A DNA stretch of 63,853 bases, the filler included, from Reticulomyxa filosa (Eukaryota > Protista > Foraminifera), in the NCBI GenBank assembly GCA_000512085.1. It is 16 parts of 16 records of this genome, joined end to end, with 100 filler letters (N's around TTAATTAATTAA, not from the genome) between each part and the next. Parts side by side here need not be neighbours in the genome. Positions count along the whole stretch, not along the records: positions 3,186 to 21,005 come from ASPP01008587.1; 15 more parts are not named here. One strand, given 5' to 3'. This document shows positions 3,186-21,105 of this stretch, piece after piece (positions within the stretch are counted from its first letter, which is position 1; each line of letters starts with the position of its first letter). The position numbers and the translations under genes were made by a program. The notes under the pieces are model-generated. The model saw only the letters and a list, made by a program, of their open reading frames with translations. It was not told where the DNA came from and did no database searches.

Positions 3186-4307
3186 GAAAGCTCTGATTAA
3201 AAAAAAAAAAAGGGGCTAAACTGAAGTTCAATAAAACATGGGTGTAACGCGAAATTTTCCCCAACAGACAAGGCATGGCTTGCTTCAATTTGGATTGGTA
3301 AAACTCGTGGACGACAATTGGAGTAAACATGTCATCCTTCAACACTTTATGCACCACCAAAATCAATGAGAGCTCTTCTGGTTGGTTTTCATTCTCACGC
3401 AATGCTGTCATCACACGTCGAACCAATTCCGGCAACAATTGCTTCACATTTACGTCCGTTAAAAAAGCCAATGCCAATTTTCGCCTTGATACAGTGGGTC
3501 ACAAGCATACATATATACACACCATCTCCTACGTAACAACAACTTACATTACGTGCCGTACAAAGAAGGCATTTGTTCCGTACTTGTATTTTTTATTTTT
3601 AGCAGTTTTAAAAAAATTTTATATAAAATATTTAAAAAAATGTCTGGCAAAGTCAAACACGCCACAATTCTTACCAATTGGTTTGTTTCGGCTCTGCTTC
3701 ACTGCATTCGCTTTTCATCGATTCATTCGATACCTTCTTTTCATTACTGCTGTCAACGCTCACTGAGGAGAAATCTTTGCTTGGTTGGACTCTCGAGCTT
3801 GACTCACTGGAGGTGTTGACAACTTCCTTTGACTCGTCCAATGGATCCATCTTTTTTGTTTTTTTAGTTATATTTTTTTTTTGAGTAATAACACAATATA
3901 ATATAATTACAGTTAATATGGATAATAACTACATGTACATATATTTTTTTTAATTAGCAAAATTCAACTAGTTTTCTTTTCAAATCTCTTTTTTTTACGT
4001 GTTGAACACAAACAAACCCATTCGACAAAACTTTTTGGGCATTTTCAATTGATCCTTTTACGACAAATATTTTTAATGACATTCGTTGCTCTTGCTCTGC
4101 ACAACTGAAAGCGTCATCAAAATCAGTTGGGTTGGATATTGTCAACTTGTCCAATTCTTCGTCTTCAAATTGTAAATAATAGGCATTTGATCCTAATTTA
4201 AATGATTTCTCCACAAATGCTAACAAATCATTGTAGCGGTCTTTTGTTGGATAGTGCCATCTTCGTATATCTTTTCCATATATGACTTTGACTTTAATTT
4301 CCGTCAT
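3186..4307 (-). CDS. PB1-domain protein (p62/NBR1-like N-terminus), 3' truncated
   Basis: Exon 1 has the basic IKVK..DIRR motif and the acidic OPCA motif QFEDEELDKLTISNPTDF. Further exons at ~3846-3679 (Ser-rich) and ~3498-3221. Confidence 0.75.
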
Positions 4308-4710
4308 CTCCTTAGTTGTTTTTTTTTTCTCTTGCCTCTAACACGTTTAAAATGTCGTTCAAATTTTTGCTTGTTTGTGAAAAAACAACAAAGTTTTTAC
4401 TTTATGAAACCCCTTGTTCTTGCTCAAATATTTCCAAGTTTTACGACTTAAAGTGTGAAAAGTAGTGTATTATTTCTCTGCAACAAAGCGAGTTCTTTTT
4501 GAAATGTGTTGAATACATGTTTTCATTTTTTAGAAACGATATATGACGATTTTATTTGAAAAAATAAGTCGATACATACTGTAACAACGAATACGTTACT
4601 CCAAAAGAGTTATTTTTTAAAGTTCTTTCGACTCGAATATAATTGTACAACGTCTTTATACAACAATGGTTAAAAAAAAAGACCGTTTTATCTGTCTATT
4701 TTTGATTTGT

Positions 4711-7700
4711 TCACTGTTTGTTCGGTTGTGTGTCCGCTAGTTCCACATGAGCTCCCAAATCTTGCGATGAGATATGTTTCTCGAGCTTGTCTAAAACATT
4801 ATTGTCGGCATTAGCAGAGGGTTGAGGCTGATCATTTTTGTCGTCTTCCTCCTCTTCTTTATTTTCTGATTCCTCATCTGCATTGTCTTCAGAATTTAAG
4901 TTTGGATCATCGGGCACAAGTTGTTTTCTTTCAACTTGGGATAACAACAACTTTGAATTAGCAAAGAAATATGATTCATTCACGTCCTCAGGCTATTCAA
5001 AGCAATATTTATAAAAGCAAACAAGATATTTTTCTTTTTTTTTTTCCCCCTCGTTTATTTCCAATGACAAAATTTTGTTAGCACTTAACATCATATCGCA
5101 ATACTTTGACAACTTGTAAGACCAGGTCGAACAATGGTTGCCAAACGAATAAAGATAACAAGAAGCCAATAAATATGGACATGAGCCAGCGACTAACTGA
5201 TTGTCGGAACGCAAAGCCATCTTTGCTGTTCAAAGTCGAGCTGTCCACACGTTGCAAGTAATCGACCATGGAGCGTTGAGTTTGTTCATACTGCGTTACA
5301 TTTTCGTCATGAATATCGATCTGATTGATGCACATGCTTGTTGTCGCAGGATCATTATACGAGTTAGCCGCGTTTCTCGACATGTCAAATCGAACAACAA
5401 AGATCAGCGTGATAATAGCACAAACGATAGTCCACACGACAGTGAAGCCCCACGCAGCATATTTGCACCAGTGGAACCAGGAATATTGTTTGTCCATGAT
5501 CTTGCGACGAAGGGCGGTAGCGGCCAAGTACTTTTGTTCTGCAGTGATGAGCGCTTCAAGCTCTACGGTATTTGTGTCTCCCGTCTGTGTGCCAGTTTGT
5601 GCACCATCAGTGGTTTGTACTGGCTGTTCGTCGATTGTAGTCTCCAAAATACGTGTCAATGTTTCAATGTCCATGTTTGCAAAATCGGTGGGTTTCCATT
5701 TGGTCGTCAGACGTTTGTCGCGTTCCGTCATTTGGTCCAAAGAGCGCACGCTCAATGCCTTCAGCATGCTCGGTGGGGCAGGACTTGTTCCGGCAGGTCC
5801 ATCGGGTTCATGTTCTGCATTCAACACCATTTTGGCGGAAGGAGATCTTGCCTCGCCCGGAGTAGAGGTATTTGACATCAACGTATACATTTGATCATCT
5901 TCCTCCTCCTCCTCTGCATTTCCATCCTCGATTGCGGCCACTTTAATCTTGTCTGCATTTGCTGAGGCTTGGTTTGCGTCTGTAAATGCGGTTACTTTGA
6001 TATCATTATTGCCAGGTCCGGCGTCGGTTGTGCCAGGGATAGCCTCGCCAGGAGGACCATCATCTTCCTGTTCACCATCGGTCGCACTGTTGGTCGCTTT
6101 CATGTACTCTTGCTCTTGCAATTCGATGACTTTGAGCAGGTTTTGCGTGGCTTGCATTTGAACATCATCGTCCTCCTTTTCGGAGCGCTCTTTGTTTTTG
6201 TATCGCTTGAAGCAGAACTTGATCAAGATCAAAGGCATTTGAATCAAAGAGGCATAAAAGGAAATAACCCAATCATTGCCCCAAGGGTTGGTAGGATTGC
6301 CATAAAATAGACCGTTGGCCGCAGTCAATGTAAACAATTTGGCCAAGAATCCCGCCAATCTGGCTTGTCGACGATAACCAGTGCCTTTGTAACGGAAAAA
6401 TAATCCAATGACCATGTGGTCACATCGGATAGCAATGTACCAGAGTTTCAATACTTTCCACCAGAAAATTTCATTGCTGCGTAATATCTTGGTTTCCAAG
6501 CCGACTCGGAAGTCATACCAATTGGCATCTCGGAAGTGTTGCCACACACCACGACTGTGAGAAACCAGCGGCTTGTCGTTGACGTCTGGAGCAACGTAGA
6601 GCAGGATGCCAAACACGGCAAATGCGACCAAGACCAAAATCCATCCTGCTGGATACTTGGCCAAGTTGGTGGCGTTGATTGCTCGGAACGAGTTAAGCTT
6701 TACGTAGTTAATGTTCGGAGTGAATGTTCTGTGTTTAAGACTGAACGGCGTTGTGTGATTGCATACGCAAATGACCGAATTGTCGGACGTGTTTCGATCT
6801 CGCACATAGCATCCATAGCCATCCCATTCATTCGTGGTTGTGTTGTAAAATACGCAACTCGGATACGAGACAGAGGGATCACTGTAATCCGCCCACTCCT
6901 TGTTTTGGATTTTGATAATGGCAGGATTGCATATATCGGAGAATGACAGACCGTCATTGATGCTAGTGTCTCCATAAGAAAGATTGAAGGCTCGATACAA
7001 TGGAATCGTGACGTTCACGTCGACGACGATGCCCGTGAAGTTGTCATCTTGCTCGTGTCCGGGATTGAATGGATTCACATTGCTGGATATCACACCACAG
7101 TCCACATTCGAGCTGTAATTTTGAAAGGTTTGGAATGCCGAGTTGGGCAAAGCAACAGTGTCACTGCAGCTGGTCGAGTCCGTCACACCCGAAACTTGGT
7201 CCGTGTCGTTGCTCGTTGTGACACGAGTCACGGTCACATTGAGAACAGGCGTTGTCACTGTTACTGTCTCTCCGGTCACAGCGGTGGCGGCTGTCAGCTG
7301 TCCAATGTTTTGGGCGAGATTAACAAATGTTAAGCCCAATGAAGAGGCATTCACCTTTGCACATCCAAAGTTGTTGAGAATATTGCCGACCGTGGCCAGT
7401 CCATTGGTGGCCGTGTCGGTGTCCAATGCGGTTTGCGTTTCTCCTGAGTCGACGATCAACTGGGTTGCAGTCGAGACAAGATTTTGTGTTATGTTGAGAG
7501 CCGATTTGGTGATAAGGACGTGCTGAGGATCTGCTGCGCTGTTCGAAGCGACCGTGCTTGCGCTTTGACCTGTAGTGCTGCCATCAGAATTGGTCAATGG
7601 AATATTATAGCTTTCACACACACTGCCAATGCTGTTGGTGACAGCAGACATCACGGTCAGTGATCCTGTGATGTCGGGCAACGTCTGTGGATTCAAGGCT

Positions 7701-10700
7701 TGAATAGCGTTCAATGCGTATGCCACAATTTGATAGGACAAGTTGACCAATAGCTGCACGTCATTGTTGTTGATGCCGCGGAGCTGCTGCAAGTATGGAG
7801 TCAGCTGTTGCACTGCAAGACTTGCGTTCAGCAAGGCTTCGCTTGCATTCTTCGCGGTTAGATGTGCGTTCGGATTTATGAAACCGGGCACCAAAGTATT
7901 GACGAATGCCTGCGGTTGGATTGTGTTAAATTCCTCGCTCTGACTGACCTGCACCAGCAATTGCGTACACGTGGCCGCGCCATACATGTCGACCACAATG
8001 GCATAAATGGAGGGTGCTCCACCGGACAGACTGGTAGGATACTTTATAATGTGATTGATGGCATCATAGGTGATCTTGGTGCTTTGATTGCCGTAGGAAT
8101 TGTTTCCAGTGGTGGAGAATTTAAAATATTTGGCAGTACTGATAAAGAATCCGTTAATCTCAAAGTTGAAATAAAGGTTCTTTGATTGCGGACTGCTGTC
8201 TCGCCAAGTGTCATTACAATACAAAGTGAACACAGTATCCAAGGCCTGTCCTTGGGTCGGGGAAATGGAACATGATCCATTTTGTGGCGGGGCGTTTCCT
8301 GCAAAGTCAACGAAGTTGTATCCCGCCGACGTAACTTGCGATCCTTGTAATGTTCGATACGTGATTGATGTGGATACTTGCAATTTGTACTTATGTCCGT
8401 TGACGAATAAGCCACTTCCTTGCTTGCAAATGTCTGTTGTGAACCAAGTACTTTGGTCGCTTGAGCCCGAAAACCCGGTCTTTTGATTGAAGCGGAACGT
8501 CTCTTCCACGGCGTAGTAATAGGTGGTACTGGACATCATGCGTCGAGTGGATTGCTGGTTGTTATTGCTTTGGCCTTGTATTCCAATGATACGACGTGAG
8601 TACACTAAGGAATATTGACTGGATAATTGTTGATAATTCTTCAACAGGTTGTATCCTGTTCCCGTGGTCGTGTCGTTCAAGATCCAAGAGGAGATAATGT
8701 CACTGTTTTTGATGCGGGAGTAGTTGGCAATCGAATTGGTCAAATGGGTCGTGACAGTCACTGTGAAATACAAGTTTGTGTTAATGGTCTTGTCCTTGTT
8801 CATTAATGGAATGTCGATGGTTACTGTTATGTCATTCGGCGTTATTGGTGCACTTGTCGGGGCCGAGGTCGGGGCATAGAGTTTGTATTTGTCGTAGGTA
8901 AAGTTTAAGCAAATGGAATTGCAGTCAAATCCATAAGGTCTTGAACTGATATTCTTCTTCAGATCGCAACTAAATTCGTAATAAGGGTCACAATACATTT
9001 TACTGCCCGCGCATTGGAAGGCGTCCTGTTGGCCGTGGTGATAACAGTCCAAATCCACATCTTGCGTACCACGCACAGCATAAAGGGTCAGATTGCCGCA
9101 ACTTCCTCCATAATAGGACTCCTCGGGATCGGGCTGTTGACAGTTGATAGTCGTGGTGTGCACATTGTCATATATGGATTGCGTCATGTCCAACGTCGGC
9201 GAGTACAAAGTCATGCTCGCCATGCATAGGATATTGACAGTCAACTTGAACGTTTGTCGCCTGGCGCAAGTCGAACGTGCTGAATCCGCAACTGTACATA
9301 TCTTCGCATGTTATATTTGCGGTCACTGCATTTGCAATTATTGACAACTCGGGCTCTTGTATTCGCAATTGCCAACAAGAATATCTGGTCAAGCAAGCCA
9401 TGTTCAAAGAGAACCTTGGAGTGATCAAAGTTGCAGCTCCCAACTGCCATCCATAAAAATAAGGTGAAACGGCGAGCACCTGTGCTTCGCTCGCCAGACT
9501 TGCGTCAATGTATGCATATACAAAATCATCAACATAATAGCTCACAATCGATAAAACTGCAGTGGTTGAATTTAATGACGCGGAGATTGTGGAATTCATT
9601 GCGTCGCCACCGAAAAACGCTACCGCGTTTGCTGCAAATCCGATTATTTGTTGTGAATAAGAGACCCCGGCAATGATACGACAATCACTGGCGCGAGAAG
9701 TGTCCAGACATGTGATATGAGCACCGCGATATTTTCCGGGGATATCGGCAACAAAATAGTTGAAACTTGTCATGCCCGACGCATTAAACAGTGGATCGCC
9801 ATTGTATAAGCCATCGCAATAGCTGCACATATAAGTCGGTCCTTCCGATGCATACATCCAGCAATTGTGTTCGTAGATGTTTCCACACCACATTTGAGCG
9901 TCAGAGCATTGTCCTGACTCAGTATTGCAAGTCAAGTTCATTCCGTTGAATCCATTCAATGAGTAAATTTGCATTTGCGAGCAATCGTATCCATCCTGTT
10001 CGTTAAATGGACAGTTAACCTGACAACGACTGGGATCACCGTACACCGAGGCAGCTGTTGGACAGAACACCCGAGCTGATTCGCAAGAATAAAACGAAGG
10101 ACCACACTTCAACTTCAATGATTCCGCATCGCTCACAGCAAAATTGGCTCTATTACAAGACGCTTCTCCATCCCAGCATTCTACTTCGACATGAGTCTCA
10201 TGGGAGGCCAACAGCGAACTGTATGCAAAGGCATAATCGCCCCTCACATTCAACGACATGTGCAATGGCAATTTCATGCGTACTCTTTCCAGCAATTCAT
10301 TGGTATGATTAAAATTCGTATCGTATCCGACAATCGTCATTCCATATCCAGACATGTAACCATCCAACTCGATATGGAGAGTAGACACCGTCAAGGCCTT
10401 TGCGTCTAACACAACACCTTCACAGGCCTCCTGGCCATAGCATTCCAGTCTGCAATGTTTCGCGGAACAATTCAACTGTTTGTACTGACAACTGTAGTCT
10501 CCATGACATAACAGCGTGCAATTGTTGTCATCGGTGCAAGTGGTGACTATTGAAAATACGGTCGGGGCAATGGTAGGACTGGACGTCGGAGCAACCAATA
10601 GCCAATTGGCGTACGAGTAATTAACACATATGCTGTTGGCAGGGGCACAACTATATCCTTCATAATCGATTGTGGGTTCCAACTCGCAGCTCATTTCGTA

Positions 10701-13700
10701 CTGAGGACTGCAAAAGAATTCCGAGTTTTGACAACCGAAATCGTAGTCCAACAATTGACGACGAGTAACTGCAATTCGGTGACAAGTCCAATTCACATCC
10801 TTGCTTCCGTGAATCGCGTACATCGATACATTGTAACAGGAAGGAACATCGTAGAAGCTGTAATATTGACAATCCATTTGAACAGGGGCTCTGTTATCAG
10901 GCAAGGTCTGGTTTATTATCGGTGCAAACAATGTAATATCGGCGCAACTGGCGTTATAGCTTGCACACGTAATGTTCACAATATTGGAGAGCTGGAAGTC
11001 CCATTGACTTGCTGCACAAGCACTATTTTCTAAACACGAAATGTCCACAACCATTTGGTTTTGAATATCTGTCGAGCTCACTTCCAGGTCACTCACCTCC
11101 TGAGTAAAAATTGCAGTATCTGCACACGACCAAGGAGACCAACACAACATATACAACGTTCTTTGTGGCAGCGTGATTGACATGTATCGGAATTGCTCCA
11201 TTGGATAGCCAAATGTTTGCAATGATAGACGTCTGCTAGGCCTTGCTGGGTTTTGAGTTATTAGCACCACGTTTTGTGCATATGCTGCATTTAACTGGGC
11301 TTGGTAAAAGTTTTGAGTACTTAATGCATATAATGAAATGGTTCCAATGTAATTGGCCTCAATGTTCGCCCCATTGACATCACTTGTTTCCGCTCCGTTT
11401 CGAAGACTTGTCACTCCTGCGATGATCATACACTCTTCATTCGATCCGCCATAGCAACGAATAATGGACGTGGCATATTTGAATGGATACTCGGCAATGA
11501 ACCAATTGTATCTCGGAATATTCGAAGGCAAACCCAAATCGACGCCACAAGTGCTGCAATTGTAATCTTGGTTTTCAGACAAATAGCAAAATTGATCAAA
11601 GCTTTTGCCACAATAAATGGATGCATCCGTGCATTGGGAATATACTGGATTACACATCAGATCCATCTTTGTCAATCCACCAATGTTGAATAATTGGATG
11701 TTGTCGCATGTATTGTTGGCCCCAGTGCAATCGATAAGACAGTTGCTGTTATTGTTGTACACTGCTGCTGACACTGGACAAAACACGGTCAAGGAATCAC
11801 AACTGGCGCTCGAACCACAGTTAATCTGTATACGATCTGCTTCCGACGTATAAATAGCAGCATCTGCACATCCTTGCGATGAAATGCAGCTCATACTCAA
11901 GAACAGACCATATGATCCATACACTTCACCTCCTAAAAACGCACGCTCGCCTGCCACAAGTATGTTGACAGTGATATTGTCCCCACGGTCCACACGTGCA
12001 ATCAACTCGTCCGTGTCTTTGACATAAGTCGGCGATCCATAGATCGTCATATCTTTGCCGGCGGCTGTTCCCAACAATTCAATTTCGAGTGTATGCACAG
12101 TGATGCTGTCTGCAATAATTGTAACTGAAGAGCAGGCATGGCTGCCATCACATAACACACGACAATGATGCGCTGTGCAATTCAAAATGGCATCGGAGCA
12201 GCGATAATTGCCCGTACAATTGAAAAAGCAAAAATTGGTAGAGTTGTCACACATGGGCGTAATATGCACACTAGTCGGAATCGTCGTCGGAGCCGAGGTA
12301 GGAGCGATTTCGCGATATTCTTCATACGAGTAGTTCAAGCACAAGGAGCTCGGATCATTTTTGCACGTATATCCAAGACGACTGAAACTGTCGGCTTGAA
12401 TCTCGCAGTCAAACTCGAAAAGAGGAGTGCAGTAAATGGTTGTGTTTATGCAAGCAAAGTCCCCGATCCAAGGCGTTATTTGCGATATCATGCGTCGGGA
12501 AGGTTGAATTATTCTGTCCCAACATCTCAAATTCATGTTCTTGTTTCCTGTTTGTGCGTACAAAGTCATATTCGAGCAAGTGTGGCTCATCGGTCCTGTG
12601 GAGTACTGAGAGCAGTCAATCTTCACTTGTGGGAACAAGGCCGAGTCCGTATCGTTCATGGAAGGGGCAATCAATTTCAGTCCGGTGCAAGTGCTTTCTC
12701 CATTACCACATGTCACGGTGACATTGTCGCTGTCTGTCAAGTTCCAATAACCGTTTCTGCACGCGTAATCTCCTAGACAACTGATATAGCTGTAACCACT
12801 TGAATAGGATATGGACCAAGTGGCATGGAAGTTCAGATCTTGACAACTCTTGGCCGTCTCGCAATACAATTCATACCAATTGGCACTAAGAATTGTGGCA
12901 TGTTCGAAAGTTCTTCTGTTATGTCGGTGATGCGTCTGCGCAATGACTCTCATGCCCTTTGCGAGATGCGCGTCAATATACGAATAAGCAAAGCTTTTTC
13001 TCGAGTGTCCATACAGGTATAATATGATGGGATTGCTAAAAACTGTAATGTTACTGCGAATTGCATCGGGTGTGATGTCGTCGTCCACATATCCATTGAT
13101 TCCAGCAATGACCACACAATTGACAGTGCCCTCGGTATGCCAATCGCAAAAAATATGTTTCTCACTGAATTTGTGTGGATAATCAGCAATATGATAGTTG
13201 TAGTCCGGAGTGTAGCCAGACCATCCGACAGTGGCATAGACATTGACAAAATTTAAATCATATTGGCCGCCACATGGACCAAAGTGCATCTGACAACCCT
13301 CACCGCACGAAAAATTTGCTTTCCAATAAAGCTCCAAGCCCATACCACAATAAAACTCCATTCCTCCACATCTCTCCGGATCACACCACTCATCCACATT
13401 ATCTTGCGCGCCATTGACATTCAAAATGGTCATGTTTGCGCATGATCCTTCATAATTGGTGCAGTACACATAACAGTCATCCGATGTCGGACAATACACC
13501 GTGCTTCCTGCACATTGGTCGCCTTCGGGGTAATAATAGTTCAACAAATTGCGATTGCGACGGAGAGCAGCATATCCACAATACAAGTACAACTGATCAC
13601 TGTTCGCAGTGGCGAAATGGGTATCTATACAAGATCGGTATCCTCCGCATTGCACTCTGACATCAGAATTATAAGTTGCATGAACACGTCCTCCTGCAAA

Positions 13701-16700
13701 CCCTTCGGTATGGGTTATATCAATGTATATGTACAGAGAGTCACGATAATACAAGTCGTCCGTGGTAGTGAAATTTCGATCAAGGCCCCACACGTACATT
13801 CCTGCACCTGCCCGGTTTTGTCGTAATTCGATATACACATTTTGCACGGTGTTGTTTGATGCGTCGACAATTGCATCTTCACATGAGGATGCTCCATGAC
13901 ACAGTATGGTACAATATGGCGTGTTACACACCAGAAGCGCCCCAAAGCATTTATAGCGACCATGACATTTGATGGTGTTACTAGGATACATACTGCTATA
14001 ATACACCATTTGAACTGGAGGCGTGTATTCGCCACATCGTCCTGCGCAGTCGAAGCCGAGTTGATTTCCAAGATCTGGGGTCAGCATACAGCTACTTTGG
14101 AATGATCGCGTGCAATACAGCGTCGCATTGGTGCACGCAAAGGGTGGTGGATAGAACTGACTCGAGGACATCTCTTCCCAACAATTGAATCGCACATCGT
14201 TTAATCCTTGTTCCGCATACACTTTCATGGCATAGCACGCCGGATCCTTGGTTAGACTGTCGTCTGTAAAGCATTGGATGTCCAAGGACTGCAAGCCATT
14301 TTCGGTGGCCGTGTCATTCACGATCGGTGCATAGATTGTGGTCTGTCCGCACGACTGGTTATATGGCCGCATTCGATATTGGCGCGAAAAGCGTAGTCCA
14401 AAGCCCACATGCCTTTGGCACAGGCGTGACGATTATTACACGAGATAAATATAGTGGTGTCGTTGTAATCCTCAAACGTTTCGATCACAGACTCGGCACA
14501 CGCTTCCGGAGTGTTGCAATACATTTCCAACGACGACATTGGAGCATAGATTGTGGTCCTGTGATAAGTTTTGATTTTGCGATAACTGAACATTTGCAGT
14601 CGCTCGACGTGGCCTGCGGAAATGACTGCACGTTGAAATGCGGCTGTGGAAAATCCGTGCAATGTGATGGCGGCGATATGTTCGTTTGCCATAATGCGAA
14701 CCTTCTTTGCATCGGACGAGGTGGACTCCACAAATGAATTGATGCCGCTAATGATGATACACTCATCCTGACAATATCTACAATTCGAGTGACAATGGAT
14801 TCGTTTTCTTCGGTATTTGTTGGGATAATCCGTGATGAAGTAATTCAAGTTGTTAATTGGTGGGATATACGTAGTGTTATACGTGCACAAAGAGCAATCG
14901 TATCCTTGCATTCCACTATCGGACACGACCGTGCATGATGTGTTGAGTCCAAGTCCGCAATGGAACTTCAAGGCGTCGCACGTGCCAAAGCGTGGATCGC
15001 AAGAGAGATCCATTTCATCAATGCTTCCAATGTGGAAAATGGACATGCCTCGACAAGCAAATTCGGTTGAAGTACAATCTACGCTACATAACCATGGCTT
15101 TCTATCCAACAACGCAGACACTGGACAAAACACTGCCGCGTTCAAGCAGCTGTACGATGTGTCATTCTTTCCATCGCTGTCGGTGCAATTGACATACAAA
15201 CTGTCGGCATTGGAAGCCGCAAAACGGGCTAAGGCACACGAGTAACTATCTTTGCAATAGATCGAGGCGGACGAATTATGTCCCACAAAGATCTCACCAT
15301 TCATAAATGATTCACTGGTCTGTGCATTCACATAAATGGACAAGGGCGTATATCGAAGTACGTACGAATCCGCAAAGTCCAGGTCGTATCCCATTACTTG
15401 CAAAAAGGCTCCACTGCGATAGCCATTCAGCCACACGGACATTGTTTGCGTATACTGATACGACACATCCAATTCCGCTCCTTCACATGCGCTTCTTCCT
15501 TGACAGGTCAAATCGCATCGCAGCGACTGACACACCAGCAAGTTGCGCAGACACGCAAAGTCGCCGGTGCAATTGAATCGACAAGTGCCAGTCTCATCGG
15601 CATTGTTGCACACTTGCATTGCTCGGAACGTAGGCGCGGGCGTAGGATGATATGTGGGCGCGCGACTTGGAGTTCGGGTGGGCGAAAAGGTCGGTGCATT
15701 GGTCGGGGAAATGGTCGGAGAACGAGTTGGGGCATTTGTCGGCGGAGTGGGGAATTGCGTTGGAACACGAGAAGGTGTTCTGGATGGAGAGAAGGACGGG
15801 GACGACGTTGGGGCAAACTGTCGATACAATGAAGTCGAGTAATTCGTGCAAAGTTGGGAATCGCAGTCATAGCCAAGGGTTGATATGTTGTCCGCTTGCA
15901 ATATGCATCCAAATTCAAACAAAGGAGTGCAATAGAAATTCAAATCGGTACAGGCAAAGCCAGATAAGGACGATCTTGCATTGGAGCCGTCTTCTGTTGT
16001 CCAACAGGAAATTTGAATATCTTGTGTGCCTCTCGTGGCGTAGACACTGGCATTGTAACACGAGGGAATGCTTAGCGAAGAATTGCTGAAGCAGGTGATA
16101 TTGTTCGGAATTACTCCAACAAGAGCTTGTGTTTGATTCAATTCCGGAATGTAGAGTCGCAGTTTGGAACAGGCGGCTTCATGCGAATGACACTCGACAT
16201 GCACCGAGCCGGTTGTCTCTTTGAAGTTCCATAGTGTATTTTCACAAGCGTATTCATTGCCACACGAAATCCATATGTCCAAGTTGCTATCGACGTGTTG
16301 GCTGCTCTTGCTTTCGATCAACGAACCCAGGCACGAGCCAGGCGTATCGCAATGCATGGTCAATTTCTTGTAGGGCGCAAACAAGGTCATACTACGAAAG
16401 GTCGCAGATTTGTGATAGCTAAACAACGACAGCTCCTCCACCATCGTGGCATCAATAATGACTGACGTAAATACGCCTCTGGAATGTCCGTAGAGAAACA
16501 TGCGCTTCATGGCATTCGAATAAATTATGGCCCCTCTTCCGTCCGGCGTTGGTTTTTGTATGTCATTGGTCGTCCCTGCGATAATATAGCATTCATTACC
16601 TCCCCATGCATTGTCACATGAAATGTTTTTAAACCCATATTTGTGGGCATACTCTGCAATGAAATAGTTCTCATTGGTCACATTTGGCAGACTACTGGTC

Positions 16701-18836
16701 CAGTCCAGATTACATGCGTCACACACATATGTATTCGATCTGAGCGACATCTTGCAGCTCGTTTCCAAACCTTTGCCACAGAATATTGTTATGCCATTGC
16801 AACTTTGTGTGATTTCGTCGCATGCCAAATCCATCGCGTTCAATCCACCGGCGTGGAACACTGTCGTACTCAAACAATTTTCTCCATTGGTCCCACAGTC
16901 AATCAGACATCTCTCTGGCAAAGACAACAACCAGGCGTTAACAGGACAGTAGATCACACTTTGCGCACATGAAAAGGCTTCCAATTGTCCTGCACTCTCC
17001 GGCAGCGCGTCACAAGCAACTTGCAACGATTCGGCGTTTGATGTATACAAATTGCTCAGCAAACACGCATCCGAGGCATTGCAACTCAATGAAACGTCTG
17101 TGAAAAATGAAGCATAAATTTCACCATCCATAAATCCTTGGCTGTCCCTTACTGTCACCAATATTGACATGCTTGTGTTTCTCGCTTCCACGACGGATGC
17201 AGTGCTTGCAAAATTTATATCATAGCCCAACACTTCAAAAACGCACCGCTTCTTTCACCAATCAACATCACCTCAATTGATTCTATCTTTGGATCACTTG
17301 CGTCCAACACGGCCCTCTCACAAGCACTTTGTCCTTCGCAAGTTAAAACACAGTTTGCACTCTGGCATACAAGCCGTTTATTGAAGCAACTGATTTTTTT
17401 ATTTTTTTTTTATGCAAACTTTTTTGTCAAGCCTTCATGACCCCAAAAAAAAAGAAAGGCCTCTCAAAAAACGTACTCCTGCCTTCTTTCAATTTGAGAA
17501 AAACAAAGAGTTCAAAAAAAATCATAATTATAATTATAATTTTGACTATGACTATCAAAAAAAAAAAAAAAACCTGTAATCTCCACTGCAAGGGAAGTAA
17601 CAAGGGTCTGGTGTTGAGCATGTTATGTTATTGCCAGTGTCCAATAAACGACGATTGTGGACCCTTTCAACTGTTCGTTTTTTTTATTCACAGACAGTTT
17701 TTTTTTTTTGTAGTTTATTCGTTTATTTCATTAACTCCTCTTTTGATCTTTCCCCCCTTTTTCCTTATTACAAGCAACCCAATTTAAGTTAAGTTTAATC
17801 TAAAACAAAACCCCCCAAAAAAAAATCTTTTTTCCCCCTTTATGTTTTTGAACGTTCTTGTAACAGTATACCTTGATCTTCAGAGACGTCGTCAAAAATA
17901 TTCTCACATGCATCACAGCTCCAATCATTTGTGTCAAGATTATTTTTAAATAAACATTGTGTTGCAAAGTGTTCCCCACATTTCTATTATTACAAAAAAA
18001 AAAAAATCTATGAAAAAAAAAGAAATGCACACATACATACTTAAAATACAAACCATTGATACTCCTTGACAGCCATTAGTTCCTTGACAAACAATATTTG
18101 CGCCTGACAGTCCTTTTTTGTTCCACACAACAAGATCCTATCAGCAGTTGCGAAGAGCGACATTGGCACACGTATACACAACAAAAAAAAATGAGCAAAA
18201 TTTCTTTTGAATGCGTGCGAAGATCCGCACATACGTAAAAAATATAAACGTTTAAAAAACTGCATACATAAATTATCACAAACTTAAAAAAAAAAAAAAG
18301 GACAAAACTTGGCAAACACCTTCACGGTCCTGACAAGTAACAGTACAATCATTGTCGTACGAAGGACAATAGATTTCAGTGCCTGTGCAGGCATCAACAT
18401 TATTGCATTGCATCCGCAGACTGTCTGCTTTTTTGGCTTCGATTTCAGCGTCTTTGCAACTTGTTTCTGCAGTACATACAACTTGAACACGGTCGTTTTT
18501 ACTGGCACTAATGAATAGATTGTTTGCTGCGTTTGAATTGTTACTGAGGATTATAATGTCGCGGGGTAATGCTGCGCCAATTGACCGGATACTCAAGTCC
18601 ATACCACTCCATTCGCCGTTCAACACTACTTTCACTTCTTTCGCCTCGCGATTGGCAATGCGGTAATTCACTCCTTCACAACTTCTCTCTGCTTCACAAA
18701 TCAACTCGCAACTTTGGCCACTGTTGCAAGTTAATAATTTATCTTTACATTCGCCTGGAGTTTTGCAATTAATCACCTCTCCATGCGTTATTGTTAACGC
18801 CCACAGGGAGGTTAAAACGAGCGTTAAAAGGAACAT
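4711..18836 (-). CDS. Giant polycystin-1/REJ-like membrane receptor (~4,470 aa): signal peptide, Cys-rich repeats, REJ, GAIN/GPS, 5 TM
   Basis: Phase-consistent exons 18836-18309, 18137-18054, 17983-17872, 17670-17574, 17389-5090, 4992-4711. Three frame breaks inside the long exon (~17238, ~14366, ~9225). REJ motif NAPPQNGSCSISPTQGQALDTVFTLYC..WRD; GPS CVFYNTTTNEWDGYGC..CVCNHTTPFS; PKD1-like HMVIGLFFR..YRRQARL..NGLFYG and RWLMSIFIGFLLSLFVWQPL. Confidence 0.85.
8880..17389 (-). repeat. Five tandem ~530-560 aa Cys-rich protein repeats, most separated by APTxxPT mucin-like linkers
   Basis: Each unit starts C..G...C....L.C....C.(L/V).C.G..(A/S)C and ends FYC.P.(F/Y)E..C...G(F/Y).C....C. Approximate units: 17389-15830, 15620-14010, 13990-12320, 12260-10600, 10550-8880. 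A shorter unit is encoded by exons 1-3. Confidence 0.85.
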
Positions 18837-21105
18837 CACTTTGGACAGGGATGATCCCTTTCTTTTGCTTTGAAATGGTTGTTTGCGCTAAAAAAAAAAG
18901 GTATTAAAAAGTCTGTTTGAAAACTTAGCTTTTAAAAAAAACAGACCAAATCATTTATTATAGTATCGATTACTATGTCGTAATCAAAACTAAATGGAGA
19001 CAAGTGTATTATAGAACGATATAATGCAAAGTTAATTATCACTTTACAAAAAACAGTCTTTCATGAATTTGTCAGTCCCTACAAAAATTAACATGATTTG
19101 ATGAGCATCATTTTACACTTTTTTCACTTGTTAGTGGTCACGTTTTACGCTTGCCATCCTTCGTCTTTTGTCAATATCTGGTCTGTCCTTTTTATATATC
19201 ATATCAAATGCCAATGTTTCTGTTTTGGCTCTTGACTGTTCCTGTTTCACAGACGGACATTCTCTTGTTGCTTTACAAATCAATGAACAATGGCAAATCG
19301 AGGAACACAAACCAGAGTTTTTTTTTATGCAAATTTTGATTAAGAAGTTTTTTGTAATAAAGTTTTCAATTAACATATTCAGACGTGCCGAAATCTTAAT
19401 GTGCAAAAAAAAGGTGGGTTGCATCAAAAGAATACATACCAATTTACTAAAAAGCGAATATTCATTAAACGTAAGCAAACAAAAGATTTGACACCACCTT
19501 TAAACCACGAAGCCAATATCAAGGCAACGTGAATGTTTTAATTGAACAAATGGCTTACATTAGTAGCAAATTTTCAATAACGAAACGGTTGTTGGGTGCA
19601 CTTATTTGACGTACACATATTTGCACCGAATTTACTTTAAGCATGCCTTTTTTTTGGGAATAGAGATAATATAAAATAACATACAAAAAAAGTTTTGAAT
19701 GTGAATAAGTTAAATTAAATAATCTAAACTTTACAAGTGTATACAGACTTTCAATTTTATTTTGCTTTCACTGGTTTGACTTGGGACAAAAATGTAATAT
19801 TGCAACTCGCTTGTGGTTTTCTCTTGTTGCATATGAAACATTTAGCAATCCATATACAACGGCCATGTGCAAATTCTAAATGTAAAAAAATGAAAACAAG
19901 TTAAAAAGTGAGGAAATGCGCGACCTGTAAAGAGAAGTTTGCACTGAACTGACAACTTCCTTCTTCCAAACACTTCTTTACTTCTTGTCTCATTTTTGCG
20001 TTTTTTGTTTACAATTTATTAATTTACTCTCTTTTAAAAGAAATATCAAAAGTACATACTTTCGTATTTGCCACACACCGAGTATATGAATTTGTCATTA
20101 GTGCAAACACCAGATTTTAATACGATTTCTAAAAAATTCGCCTTTATTTTCAAAATGTGCTGCTCTTACTTTTCCTTTATACAAATTCAGACAAAAAAAT
20201 TATTTGTGAAACGTACCACTGATACATTTCAGTCTGTAAATATTTTTTTAAAATTTTTGATATTGTAAATTGAGATTTACTACCAATGTGGTATGTTCTA
20301 AATAGGAACTACCAAAAGCAAATAACTGCCAAAAAGAAATTTAAGAATCGGTTCATGATGTTAAAATTCAGTGTTGGCTTTTCTTTAGAGTTTCTCCTTT
20401 TTGTGTAGTAGTTAATTATTACGATGAGCTATATGAAGCAAAACAACATTGTCGTTTAGTCTCAATATGAAGAACCGCCTTATTTTTTAAAAGAACTTGA
20501 GTTTGTGAGTTCTTTCTGGTTTTTTTCGAGTGTCATTTAGTTTTTTTACGAATAAAATGATAGAAGTGTGAGTTTTCCTGCTGCTGAAAGAGGTGCGCAA
20601 ACTGTAATACGAAAGGTTTTTCGCTCTTTTGAGCAATTTAAAACAGAATAGTAATAATTTAAATAAAAGAGAAAATAAACAACAAGATTCAACAAGTGCG
20701 ACAATGTGATAGACTTTGTGATTGGACACATTGTATGCAGAGGTACTTGTTTAGTTTGGTCTCACTAATTTTGAACTTTTGTCAGTTGATTATACAGTAG
20801 GTTGCAAAGAAAACTGAAAGCATAAAACATATCATGATGATAATTGATTTTCTCAATGAAAAATCAACATTTGGACCTAATTTTTTTTAAAAAATATCTA
20901 CAAGTCTTGTAGTTTTTAAATATGATATTGATTTTTAATAAGTATTTTTTTTTGTTGGATGAAATCAACATTCTTTCAAATAATTTTTGAAAATTCTGCG
21001 ATAATNNNNNNNNNNNNNNNNNNNNNNNNNNNNNNNNNNNNNNNNNNNNTTAATTAATTAANNNNNNNNNNNNNNNNNNNNNNNNNNNNNNNNNNNNNNN
21101 NNNNN

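What the first reader, a model, noticed from the sequence alone, without database searches (positions are those of the whole stretch)
4711..18836. Giant polycystin-1-like receptor with REJ, GPS and TM1-5 but no PLAT domain and no TRPP channel module
Seen: a REJ motif (~8300-8200), GPS (~6860-6740), and five TMs with PKD1-like signatures (H..GLF.R..YRRQAR..NGLFYG; WLMS..FLLSLFVWQPL). TM1 is followed by only ~85 residues before TM2, the TM3-4 loop is long and acidic, and the protein ends soon after TM5. Known: animal PC1 has PLAT after TM1 and six more channel-like TMs. Inference: a stand-alone adhesion/mechanosensory receptor representing the PC1 N-terminal TM module with a wholly different ectodomain, perhaps on reticulopodia and coupled to divergent G-alphas.
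Basis: partly seen in the sequence, partly recalled or inferred. Interest (0 to 1): 0.8.

Follow-up and report, generated by a model that had tools for sequence, protein, structure and literature searches.

The report
Polycystin-1-like receptor without its channel
A foraminiferan (Reticulomyxa filosa) locus encodes a very large surface receptor that has the REJ domain, the GPS cleavage motif and the first five membrane helices of the kidney-disease protein polycystin-1, but lacks its PLAT domain and ion-channel half. It belongs to a large, undescribed foraminiferal family with this layout, although the assembled gene is broken by three single-base frame shifts.

Summary
The piece is the whole R. 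filosa contig ASPP01008587.1. On the minus strand, Pfam finds REJ (7922-8542, E 1e-11) and GPS (6737-6862, E 6e-9). Five membrane helices follow, then a 97-nt intron and a 93-residue acidic tail ending at 4711. The next gene is a PB1-domain gene.

A 51-sequence profile of the membrane module has human polycystin-1 as its best PDB hit (E 1e-7). A template-free AlphaFold model has polycystin-1 residues 3063-3610 (TM1-5) as the lone outlier among 48,161 chains (Z 14.2; next 6.0). The TM1-TM2 loop is helical, not a PLAT sandwich.

The exhaustive search gave 178 relatives. Of 30 sampled, every labelled one is foraminiferal, including transcriptome proteins. All 12 relatives scanned have GPS and none has PLAT or PKD_channel; their ectodomains differ.

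The ectodomain here is a signal peptide, one short unit and five ~570-residue cysteine-rich units predicted as parallel beta-helices.

Caveat: the ~4,467-residue protein needs three one-base frame corrections (17233, ~14365, ~9230). NCBI annotates four separate genes. No reads could be obtained. Function is inferred only.

The parts
18309..18836 (-). Exon 1. The ATG at 18836 is preceded by an in-frame stop. A signal-peptide-like N-terminus (about 19 residues) is followed by a short first cysteine-rich unit.
   Evidence: Sequence and translation. tblastn of a repeat unit matches 18776-18312.
18054..18137 (-). Exon 2 (28 codons, GT-AG flanks), continuing the short first unit.
   Evidence: Read. 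The phase and the cysteine pattern fit the unit alignment A3. Inferred; there is no RNA evidence.
17872..17983 (-). Exon 3 (112 nt).
   Evidence: The cysteine pattern fits A3. Inferred.
17574..17670 (-). Exon 4 (97 nt), the start of full unit 1.
   Evidence: match at 17602-17573. Inferred.
5090..17389 (-). Giant exon 5 (12.3 kb). It encodes beta-helix units 1-5, the PT linkers, REJ, GPS and TM1-TM5. It is interrupted by three single-base frame breaks.
   Evidence: ORFs 14318-17233, 9168-14408 and 5078-9244; junction sequences.
17231..17235 (-). Frame break 1. One base is missing at AAG|TG, between ...SGAFLK and VLGYD....
   Evidence: compared with the other units in A3.
14361..14368 (-). Frame break 2. 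One base is missing between ...ANIECG and YNQSC....
   Evidence: The C-x6-C spacing of the other units leaves no room for an intron.
9227..9236 (-). Frame break 3. One base is extra between ...VQVDC and CMASMTLYSP. It sits at the same position of the repeat unit as break 2.
10593..12305 (-). Cysteine-rich unit 4 (571 residues), the unit that was modelled. The other units are about 17602-15815, 15661-14030, 14021-12306 and 10592-8876.
   Evidence: Self-BLAST and alignment A3. The AlphaFold model has pLDDT 83 and pTM 0.85, with periodic short strands. It gives only generic parallel beta-helix matches, Z 8-12.5.
15659..15814 (-). Pro/Thr/Ser-rich linker between units 1 and 2. Shorter APTS linkers separate the other units and precede REJ.
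   Evidence: Translation. Pfam PT E 0.002, which is below the cut-off.
7922..8542 (-). REJ domain.
   Evidence: Pfam PF02010, E 1e-11, 44.6 bits (cut-off 25), profile positions 237-420 of 452.
6737..6862 (-). GPS motif (end of the GAIN domain). The cleavage triad reads H-T-T (6749-6757) instead of the usual H-L-T.
   Evidence: Pfam PF01825, E 6.2e-9. phmmer hits to adhesion-GPCR GPS regions. UniRef name 'GAIN-B domain-containing protein'. Family tally: HLT 33, HTT 10 of 53.
6593..6649 (-). TM1.
   Evidence: Hydropathy 2.58; model helix 20-38; coordinates.
6371..6592 (-). Cytosolic TM1-TM2 loop, 74 residues, all-helical in the model. It ends in the pre-TM2 motif H-x3-G-L-F-F-R...Y-R-R-Q-A-R. 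There is no PLAT.
   Evidence: Model pLDDT above 90, helices only. No PLAT hit at E up to 10. The motif aligns to polycystin-1.
6305..6370 (-). TM2.
6203..6286 (-). TM3.
5471..6202 (-). Cytosolic TM3-TM4 loop, 244 residues. It is acidic and mostly disordered, with a conserved helical segment just before TM4.
   Evidence: D+E 47 against K+R 24; pLDDT below 50 for model residues 216-323; conservation in A1 and A2.
5372..5470 (-). TM4.
5201..5371 (-). Extracellular TM4-TM5 loop (57 residues) with a nearly invariant cysteine.
5096..5200 (-). TM5, carrying the W-L-(M/L)-S...W-Q-P-L motif.
   Evidence: It aligns to polycystin-1 TM5.
4993..5089 (-). Last intron (97 nt, GT-AG).
   Evidence: The NCBI model P0001 is reproduced exactly, and the downstream peptide is conserved in the paralogues.
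4711..4992 (-). Last exon: a 93-residue acidic cytosolic tail and the TGA stop.

Best explanation
The locus encodes a cell-surface receptor of about 4,467 residues. This length holds only if the three one-base frame breaks are assembly errors.

Domain order:
- signal peptide
- one short and five full cysteine-rich parallel beta-helix units, joined by Pro/Thr/Ser linkers
- REJ domain
- GAIN/GPS
- a five-helix membrane bundle homologous to the N-terminal membrane domain (TM1-TM5) of polycystin-1
- an acidic cytosolic tail

A compact helical loop sits where polycystin-1 has PLAT. The protein stops where polycystin-1 continues into its six-helix TRP-like channel half. It belongs to a large family, so far labelled only in Foraminifera. 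In that family GPS plus this 5-TM bundle is the constant core, and the ectodomain is swapped (beta-helix plus REJ here; Kelch, or LRR plus LNR, in others).

Likely mechanism (inferred, not shown): the long ectodomain binds a surface, a glycan or another cell. Force or ligand binding acts on the GAIN/GPS-stalk region, which may be uncleaved or poorly cleaved in the R. filosa clade because the triad reads H-T-T. The 5-TM bundle then relays a conformational change to the conserved cytosolic elements: the helical TM1-2 loop, the helix before TM4, and the acidic loop and tail. These would engage a partner that is not yet identified.
For: Shown:
- REJ and GPS score above the Pfam cut-offs.
- There are five helices with an N-out/C-in topology.
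- The 51-sequence family profile has polycystin-1 as its top PDB hit, E 1e-7, with two colinear matches at pre-TM2/TM2 and TM5.
- The template-free model has polycystin-1 residues 3063-3610 as the single outlier among 48,161 chains: Z 14.2, rmsd 3.9 A, 190 residues aligned, next best Z 6.0.
- The ESM Atlas fold search has a 'PKD1-like 2' cluster on top, TM 0.40 with 308 residues aligned, against 0.19 or less for the rest.
- No PLAT or PKD_channel hit was found at permissive E-values, and the TM1-2 loop is helical.
- The stop at 4711 is followed by a PB1 gene.
- Three paralogues end in the same way.
- The exhaustive search gave 178 relatives.
- Relatives from Nonionella and Bolivina transcriptomes have the same GPS-5TM layout. 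None has extra TM helices, PLAT or PKD_channel.
- Paralogue P0004 carries three beta-helix units, the region homologous to this gene's REJ-GAIN stretch (46% identity; Pfam itself reports only GPS there) and TM1-3 in one gene model.
- The ORF that holds REJ-GPS-TM begins in the middle of a repeat unit and has no signal peptide. A working protein therefore needs the upstream frames.
Against: - Three frame breaks interrupt the assembled gene. Two of them fall at the same position of the repeat unit, which is odd for random errors.
- No sequencing run could be listed, so neither the frame breaks nor expression of this gene could be checked.
- The GPS triad is H-T-T rather than H-L-T.
- Foldseek alone found nothing, and single-sequence or 3-sequence searches did not reach polycystin-1.
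- No functional data exist for any family member.
Confidence: 0.72

Rival explanations
1. This copy is a young pseudogene. The three frame breaks are real mutations and no full-length protein is made, although the family as a whole is functional.
For: There are three frame breaks in 12.3 kb. A paralogous locus also has a frame break, inside its GAIN region. R. filosa holds at least five paralogous loci, so redundancy is plausible.
Against: Outside the three single-base breaks, the frames stay open for 971, 1746 and 1388 codons with no internal stop. The cysteine pattern of all units is intact. The membrane module is 50-56% identical to its paralogues, with invariant motifs. Each break can be explained by a one-base miscount in a short run. 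From memory, unverified here, the assembly is fragmentary and partly based on pyrosequencing.
Confidence: 0.2
2. The protein is one half of a split polycystin. The GPS-5TM receptor would pair in trans with a separately encoded TRPP/PKD2-like channel, and so reproduce the polycystin-1/polycystin-2 arrangement without covalent fusion. This concerns the mechanism and does not exclude the best explanation.
For: In the solved complex, polycystin-1 TM1-5 is a distinct domain beside the channel half, and this module matches it alone. The family conserves cytosolic and membrane surfaces whose partner is unknown.
Against: No TRPP-like gene lies on this contig. The genome could not be searched for PF08016. 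There are no co-occurrence or interaction data.
Confidence: 0.25
3. The locus is four independent genes, as NCBI annotates it (439, 950, 1686 and 1396 residues).
For: The NCBI gene calls.
Against: The three downstream models start at internal Met codons in the middle of repeat units. They lack signal peptides, although they encode cysteine-rich, REJ and GAIN ectodomains. The ORFs overlap, and homology continues straight across each junction. Paralogue P0004 is contiguous over the equivalent region.
Confidence: 0.03
4. The gene model is incomplete. It would really be a canonical 11-TM polycystin-1, or a 7-TM adhesion GPCR, whose remaining helices were missed.
For: GPS occurs in both of those families. 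The assembly is fragmentary.
Against: An in-frame stop lies at 4711, followed by AT-rich sequence and a PB1 gene. The same end is seen in three paralogues and in transcriptome-derived relatives, which have only 0-460 non-membrane residues after TM5. There is no 7tm or PKD_channel hit at E up to 10. The best adhesion-GPCR fold match has Z 4.2 and covers only a few helices.
Confidence: 0.03

Closest known systems
Polycystin-1 (human PKD1; structures 6A70, 8Z6B): N-terminal membrane domain TM1-TM5 with REJ and GAIN/GPS
   Same: Both have REJ, then GPS, then a five-helix bundle. The pre-TM2/TM2 and TM5 motifs align (E 1e-7). The predicted fold superposes on residues 3063-3610 (Z 14.2). Both have a long cytosolic TM3-TM4 loop.
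   Different: It has no PLAT between TM1 and TM2; a 74-residue helical loop stands there instead. It has no TM6-TM11 channel half or TOP domain, and no Pfam hit to PKD repeats, LRR or C-lectin. Its ectodomain is made of cysteine-rich beta-helix units. Its GPS triad is H-T-T. Sequence similarity is detectable only with a family profile.
Sea urchin REJ proteins and mammalian PKDREJ (sperm receptors for egg jelly)
   Same: Both are REJ plus GPS ectodomains on a membrane anchor and belong to the polycystin-1 relatives. From memory, some sea urchin members have fewer than 11 TM helices, which would show that truncated layouts exist.
   Different: Those are animal proteins with C-lectin or other modules. 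No 5-TM-only member lacking PLAT was found in the papers searched. They were not compared by sequence here.
Ectocarpus Esi0130_0068 (brown alga, male-gamete specific)
   Same: It is a protist protein with an extracellular REJ and GPS followed by a short multi-pass membrane region. The paper (PMC4700764) reports 1427 residues and 6-7 predicted TM helices.
   Different: It comes from a different supergroup branch. Its relation to this 5-TM module was not tested, because no sequence was in hand. It has no beta-helix repeats.
Adhesion GPCRs (class B2)
   Same: Both have a GAIN/GPS immediately before the first membrane helix and a conserved stalk after the cleavage site. Both are large families with modular, swappable adhesive ectodomains.
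   Different: The membrane domain here has five helices of the polycystin-1 type, not a 7-TM secretin-like fold.

Membership tests
Polycystin-1 family (PKD1, PKD1L1-3, PKDREJ) | REJ domain in the ectodomain | tested here: met
   PF02010, E 1e-11, 44.6 bits, above the cut-off.
Polycystin-1 family (PKD1, PKD1L1-3, PKDREJ) | GAIN/GPS directly before TM1 | tested here: met
   PF01825, E 6.2e-9. TM1 starts about 30 residues after the triad. The triad is H-T-T, not H-L-T. Cleavage itself was not tested.
Polycystin-1 family (PKD1, PKD1L1-3, PKDREJ) | TM1-TM5 bundle with the conserved pre-TM2 and TM5 motifs | tested here: met
   Profile against PDB: polycystin-1 E 1e-7, two colinear stretches. Fold Z 14.2 against 6.0 for the next chain. 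The Atlas top cluster is PKD1L2.
Polycystin-1 family (PKD1, PKD1L1-3, PKDREJ) | PLAT domain in the TM1-TM2 cytosolic loop | tested here: not met
   No PF01477 hit at E up to 10. The loop has 74 residues and is all-helical at pLDDT above 90. PLAT is also absent from the 12 relatives scanned.
Polycystin-1 family (PKD1, PKD1L1-3, PKDREJ) | C-terminal six-helix TRP-like channel domain with TOP/polycystin domain (PKD_channel) | tested here: not met
   No PF08016 hit. The protein stops 95 residues after TM5 and a PB1 gene follows. The same holds in paralogues and transcriptome relatives.
Adhesion GPCR (class B2) | Seven-helix secretin-like membrane domain after the GAIN domain | tested here: not met
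   There are five helices. No 7tm family was hit at E up to 10. The best adhesion-GPCR structural match has Z 4.2.
Adhesion GPCR (class B2) | Autoproteolysis at H-L|T/S in the GPS | not testable with these tools
   The motif is present with Thr at position -1. Cleavage needs an experiment.
Foraminiferal GPS-5TM family (defined here) | GPS followed by two conserved blocks (TM1-loop-TM2-TM3, and pre-TM4 helix-TM4-loop-TM5), with no further TM helices | tested here: met
   178 relatives at E up to 1e-3. Block structure and tails, hydropathy, Pfam on 12 members. The labelled members are Reticulomyxa, Nonionella and Bolivina.

The most novel reading that the evidence does not exclude
The GAIN-plus-five-helix module of polycystin-1 is an autonomous, ancient receptor unit that still exists free-standing and has expanded in Foraminifera. 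Animal polycystin-1 would then have arisen by inserting PLAT and fusing this receptor to a TRPP channel. The foraminiferal proteins would be a natural minimal system in which stalk/GAIN-to-TM1-5 signalling can be studied without the channel. The alternative, which is not excluded, is secondary loss of PLAT and the channel in this lineage.
Probability: 0.3. Interest if true: 0.78.

Novelty: new variant of a known kind. Interest (0 to 1): 0.62.

Why it matters
Polycystin-1 is the main gene mutated in human polycystic kidney disease. The role of its TM1-TM5 domain, and how the GAIN/stalk region signals through it, are still debated. This finding is a whole protist family in which that domain stands alone, with neither PLAT nor the channel, under many different ectodomains. 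That suggests the module can work as a self-contained receptor core. It bears on how polycystin-1 was assembled in evolution, and it offers smaller natural proteins for structural and signalling studies. For foraminiferal biology it points to a large, unannotated repertoire of surface receptors. In the databases these are currently named 'hypothetical', 'transcriptional regulator' or 'germination protein'.

Tried and rejected
- Own-genome search for PKD_channel and PLAT: no genome is held.
- Single-sequence phmmer and the 3-paralogue profile against PDB: only GPS hits or noise, and no polycystin-1. The 51-sequence profile was needed.
- Foldseek against PDB for both models: nothing significant.
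- Protein-atlas feature search: scores below 0.9, so uninformative.
- Word-indexed search with the family alignment: only R. filosa paralogues, so no help on taxonomic range.
- Sequencing runs: none was listed.
- The R. filosa genome paper is not held. The statement about its sequencing chemistry is from memory.
- Reading the ORF overlaps as introns: rejected. Homology with the other repeat units continues straight across each junction, and no GT-AG interval of the required length fits.
- Reading the membrane part as a 7-TM adhesion GPCR or an incomplete 11-TM polycystin: rejected.
- A joined, frame-corrected protein was not built or searched. All searches used the separate ORFs or the database proteins by reference.


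Full report
**Where the piece comes from.** The piece (window 3186-21005) is the entire 17,820-bp contig ASPP01008587.1 of the Reticulomyxa filosa assembly GCA_000512085.1. Coding sequence has about 45-49% G+C, and the flanks and introns 31-37%. All of the finding lies on the minus strand.

**Gene structure.**
- Three very long ORFs lie head to tail: 17233-14318, 14408-9168 and 9244-5078.
- Upstream, an ATG at 18836 is preceded by an in-frame stop. It opens a signal-peptide-like sequence followed by cysteine-rich sequence.
- Reading against the repeat-unit alignment gives four short GT-AG introns with consistent phases. The exons are 18836-18309, 18137-18054, 17983-17872 and 17670-17574, followed by a 12.3-kb exon from 17389 to 5090.
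- At the 3' end, a 97-nt GT-AG intron (5089-4993) joins ...VLRYD to PEDVNE.... The frame then stops at 4711. This reproduces NCBI's model RFI_11770 (P0001) exactly. The downstream peptide (Y-F-F-A-N..L-L-L) is conserved in two paralogues.
- Beyond the stop come AT-rich sequence and a separate 117-residue PB1-domain gene at 4307-3954.

**Frame breaks.** The three long ORFs overlap and are out of frame with one another. These junctions are not introns.
- At 17233 one base is missing: ...SGAFLK | VLGYD....
- At about 14365 one base is missing: ...ANIECG | YNQSC....
- Within 9227-9236 one base is extra: ...VQVDC | CMASMTLYSP....

Homology with the other repeat units runs straight across each junction. 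With these three corrections the coding length is 13,401 nt, or 4,467 codons (my arithmetic from the coordinates above).

NCBI instead annotates four genes of 439, 950, 1686 and 1396 residues. The three downstream models start at internal Met codons in the middle of repeat units. They also lack signal peptides, which makes no sense for cysteine-rich, REJ and GAIN ectodomains.

Paralogue P0004 (2710 residues, cut off by a contig end) holds three units, the region homologous to this gene's REJ-GAIN stretch (46% identity) and TM1-3 in one model. Pfam itself reports only GPS in it.

Another paralogous locus (L003) also has a frame break, inside its GAIN region.

I judge assembly indel errors more likely than pseudogenisation. 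This could not be tested, because no sequencing run was listed. One thing remains unexplained: breaks 2 and 3 fall at the same position of the ~570-residue unit.

**Ectodomain.** After the signal peptide come one short unit and five full units of about 570 residues. The units are 26-32% identical to one another and share an invariant cysteine framework. They are separated by Pro/Thr/Ser linkers.
- Pfam finds nothing in the units.
- AlphaFold on unit 4, with a 9-row alignment, gives pLDDT 83 and pTM 0.85 with a regular series of short strands.
- Foldseek finds nothing significant for this model.
- The exhaustive structural search gives only generic parallel beta-helix proteins at Z 8-12.5: glucanases, PL6 lyases, tailspikes and adhesins.

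I therefore call the unit a disulfide-rich parallel beta-helix of no assignable family. After the last linker come REJ (PF02010, E 1e-11; 7922-8542) and GPS (PF01825, E 6.2e-9; 6737-6862).

**GPS triad.** The triad reads H-T-T. In 53 family members it is H-L-T in 33 and H-T-T in 10, the R. filosa clade and its nearest relatives. Autoproteolysis may therefore be weak or absent in this clade. That is an inference.

**Membrane module.**
- Hydropathy and the model give five helices, consistent with an N-out/C-in topology and the positive-inside rule.
- The AlphaFold model (P0001 765-1396, 51-row alignment, no templates) has pTM 0.68, and 235 residues have pLDDT of 90 or more.
- The 74-residue TM1-TM2 loop is a confident helical bundle. 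The TM3-TM4 loop is disordered for about 110 residues and acidic.

**Is it polycystin-1-like?**
- Single-sequence and three-paralogue searches of PDB sequences did not reach polycystin-1.
- The exhaustive HMMER search of 1.84 billion representatives gave 178 relatives.
- A 51-sequence profile built from them puts polycystin-1 (6A70_B, 8Z6F_A, 8Z6B_A) on top, at E 1e-7. It gives two colinear matches: one at the pre-TM2 motif plus TM2, and one at TM5.
- Foldseek found nothing for the model.
- The search that aligns the model to each of 48,161 representative chains gives 8Z6B chain A (polycystin-1) as the lone outlier. It has Z 14.2, rmsd 3.9 A and 190 residues aligned, with model residues 1-529 against polycystin-1 residues 3063-3610. 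The next chain scores Z 6.0.
- The ESM Atlas shape search independently puts a chordate 'PKD1-like 2' cluster first, at TM 0.40 with 308 residues aligned. All other rows are at 0.19 or less.

Sequence and fold thus agree that this is the polycystin-1 TM1-TM5 domain.

**What is missing.** PLAT and PKD_channel give no hit at E up to 10. The loop where PLAT would sit is helical, and the protein ends 95 residues after TM5. This is a property of the family, not an artefact of this model.
- All three full paralogues end in the same way.
- Of 30 relatives looked up, all 13 that carry an organism label are foraminiferal (Reticulomyxa, Nonionella stella, Bolivina argentea). The Nonionella and Bolivina entries are EukProt transcriptome proteins.
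- No relative has extra hydrophobic segments after TM5.
- All 12 relatives scanned with Pfam have GPS, and none has PLAT or PKD_channel.
- Their ectodomains differ (Kelch; LRR plus LNR plus PT), and one has a SAP-domain tail.
- The remaining relatives come from unlabelled environmental assemblies. One lies as a single 6-kb exon on a eukaryotic contig beside V-ATPase-H and anoctamin genes.

**Mechanism.** Nothing functional is shown. By analogy with polycystin-1 and the adhesion GPCRs, I propose that the ectodomain senses adhesion, glycan binding or force. The GAIN/stalk region would pass this to the 5-TM bundle. The conserved cytosolic elements would then engage a partner. That partner could be a separately encoded TRPP-like channel (a 'split polycystin'), but this could not be searched for. 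REJ proteins of brown-algal and Cryptosporidium male gametes (PMC4700764; bioRxiv 10.64898/2026.10.13.757955) raise the possibility of a role in gamete recognition. That is speculation.

**Novelty.** The protein is in public databases as 'hypothetical' or 'GAIN-B domain-containing'. I found no paper that describes polycystin-1 TM1-5-only proteins or this foraminiferal family. It fails two defining features of the polycystin-1 family, PLAT and the channel half. I therefore file it as a new variant of a known kind, not as a member.

All searches used the separate ORFs or the database proteins by reference.

Noticed in passing
window 3954-4307 (-): A separate 117-residue PB1-domain gene lies immediately downstream of the receptor's stop. 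A further small gene (141 residues in the NCBI calls) lies towards the contig end.
   Followed up: partly
window 14361-14368 and 9227-9236: Two of the three frame breaks fall at the same position of the ~570-residue repeat unit, the loop between the paired cysteines after V-x-V-x-C. The chance of this is roughly 2% if errors are random. In the last unit this loop is also three residues shorter than in the others. No explanation was found.
   Followed up: partly
L003:3035-3513 (R. filosa contig ASPP01042897.1): The paralogue annotated as 'transcriptional regulator' has a frame break at about 3127, inside its GAIN/GPS region. The NCBI protein therefore carries about 20 out-of-frame residues there, and Pfam misses its GPS.
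   Followed up: yes
window 6749-6760: In the R. filosa paralogues the GPS reads C-N-H-T-T. This puts an N-x-T glycosylation sequon right on the would-be cleavage site.
   Followed up: no
P0003, P0004 (database names): Paralogues of this receptor are named 'transcriptional regulator' and 'germination protein, partial' in NCBI. Both names look like annotation errors.
   Followed up: no
L002:351-6335 (ENA ERZ893790 contig k147_4856086): An environmental relative of 1994 residues is encoded as one intron-less 6-kb ORF on a gene-dense eukaryotic contig with V-ATPase subunit H and anoctamin genes. The organism is unknown.
   Followed up: no
P0070 residues 1830-1990: A Bolivina family member carries SAP domains in its cytosolic tail. 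SAP is normally a DNA- or chromatin-binding motif, which is unexpected for a surface receptor.
   Followed up: no
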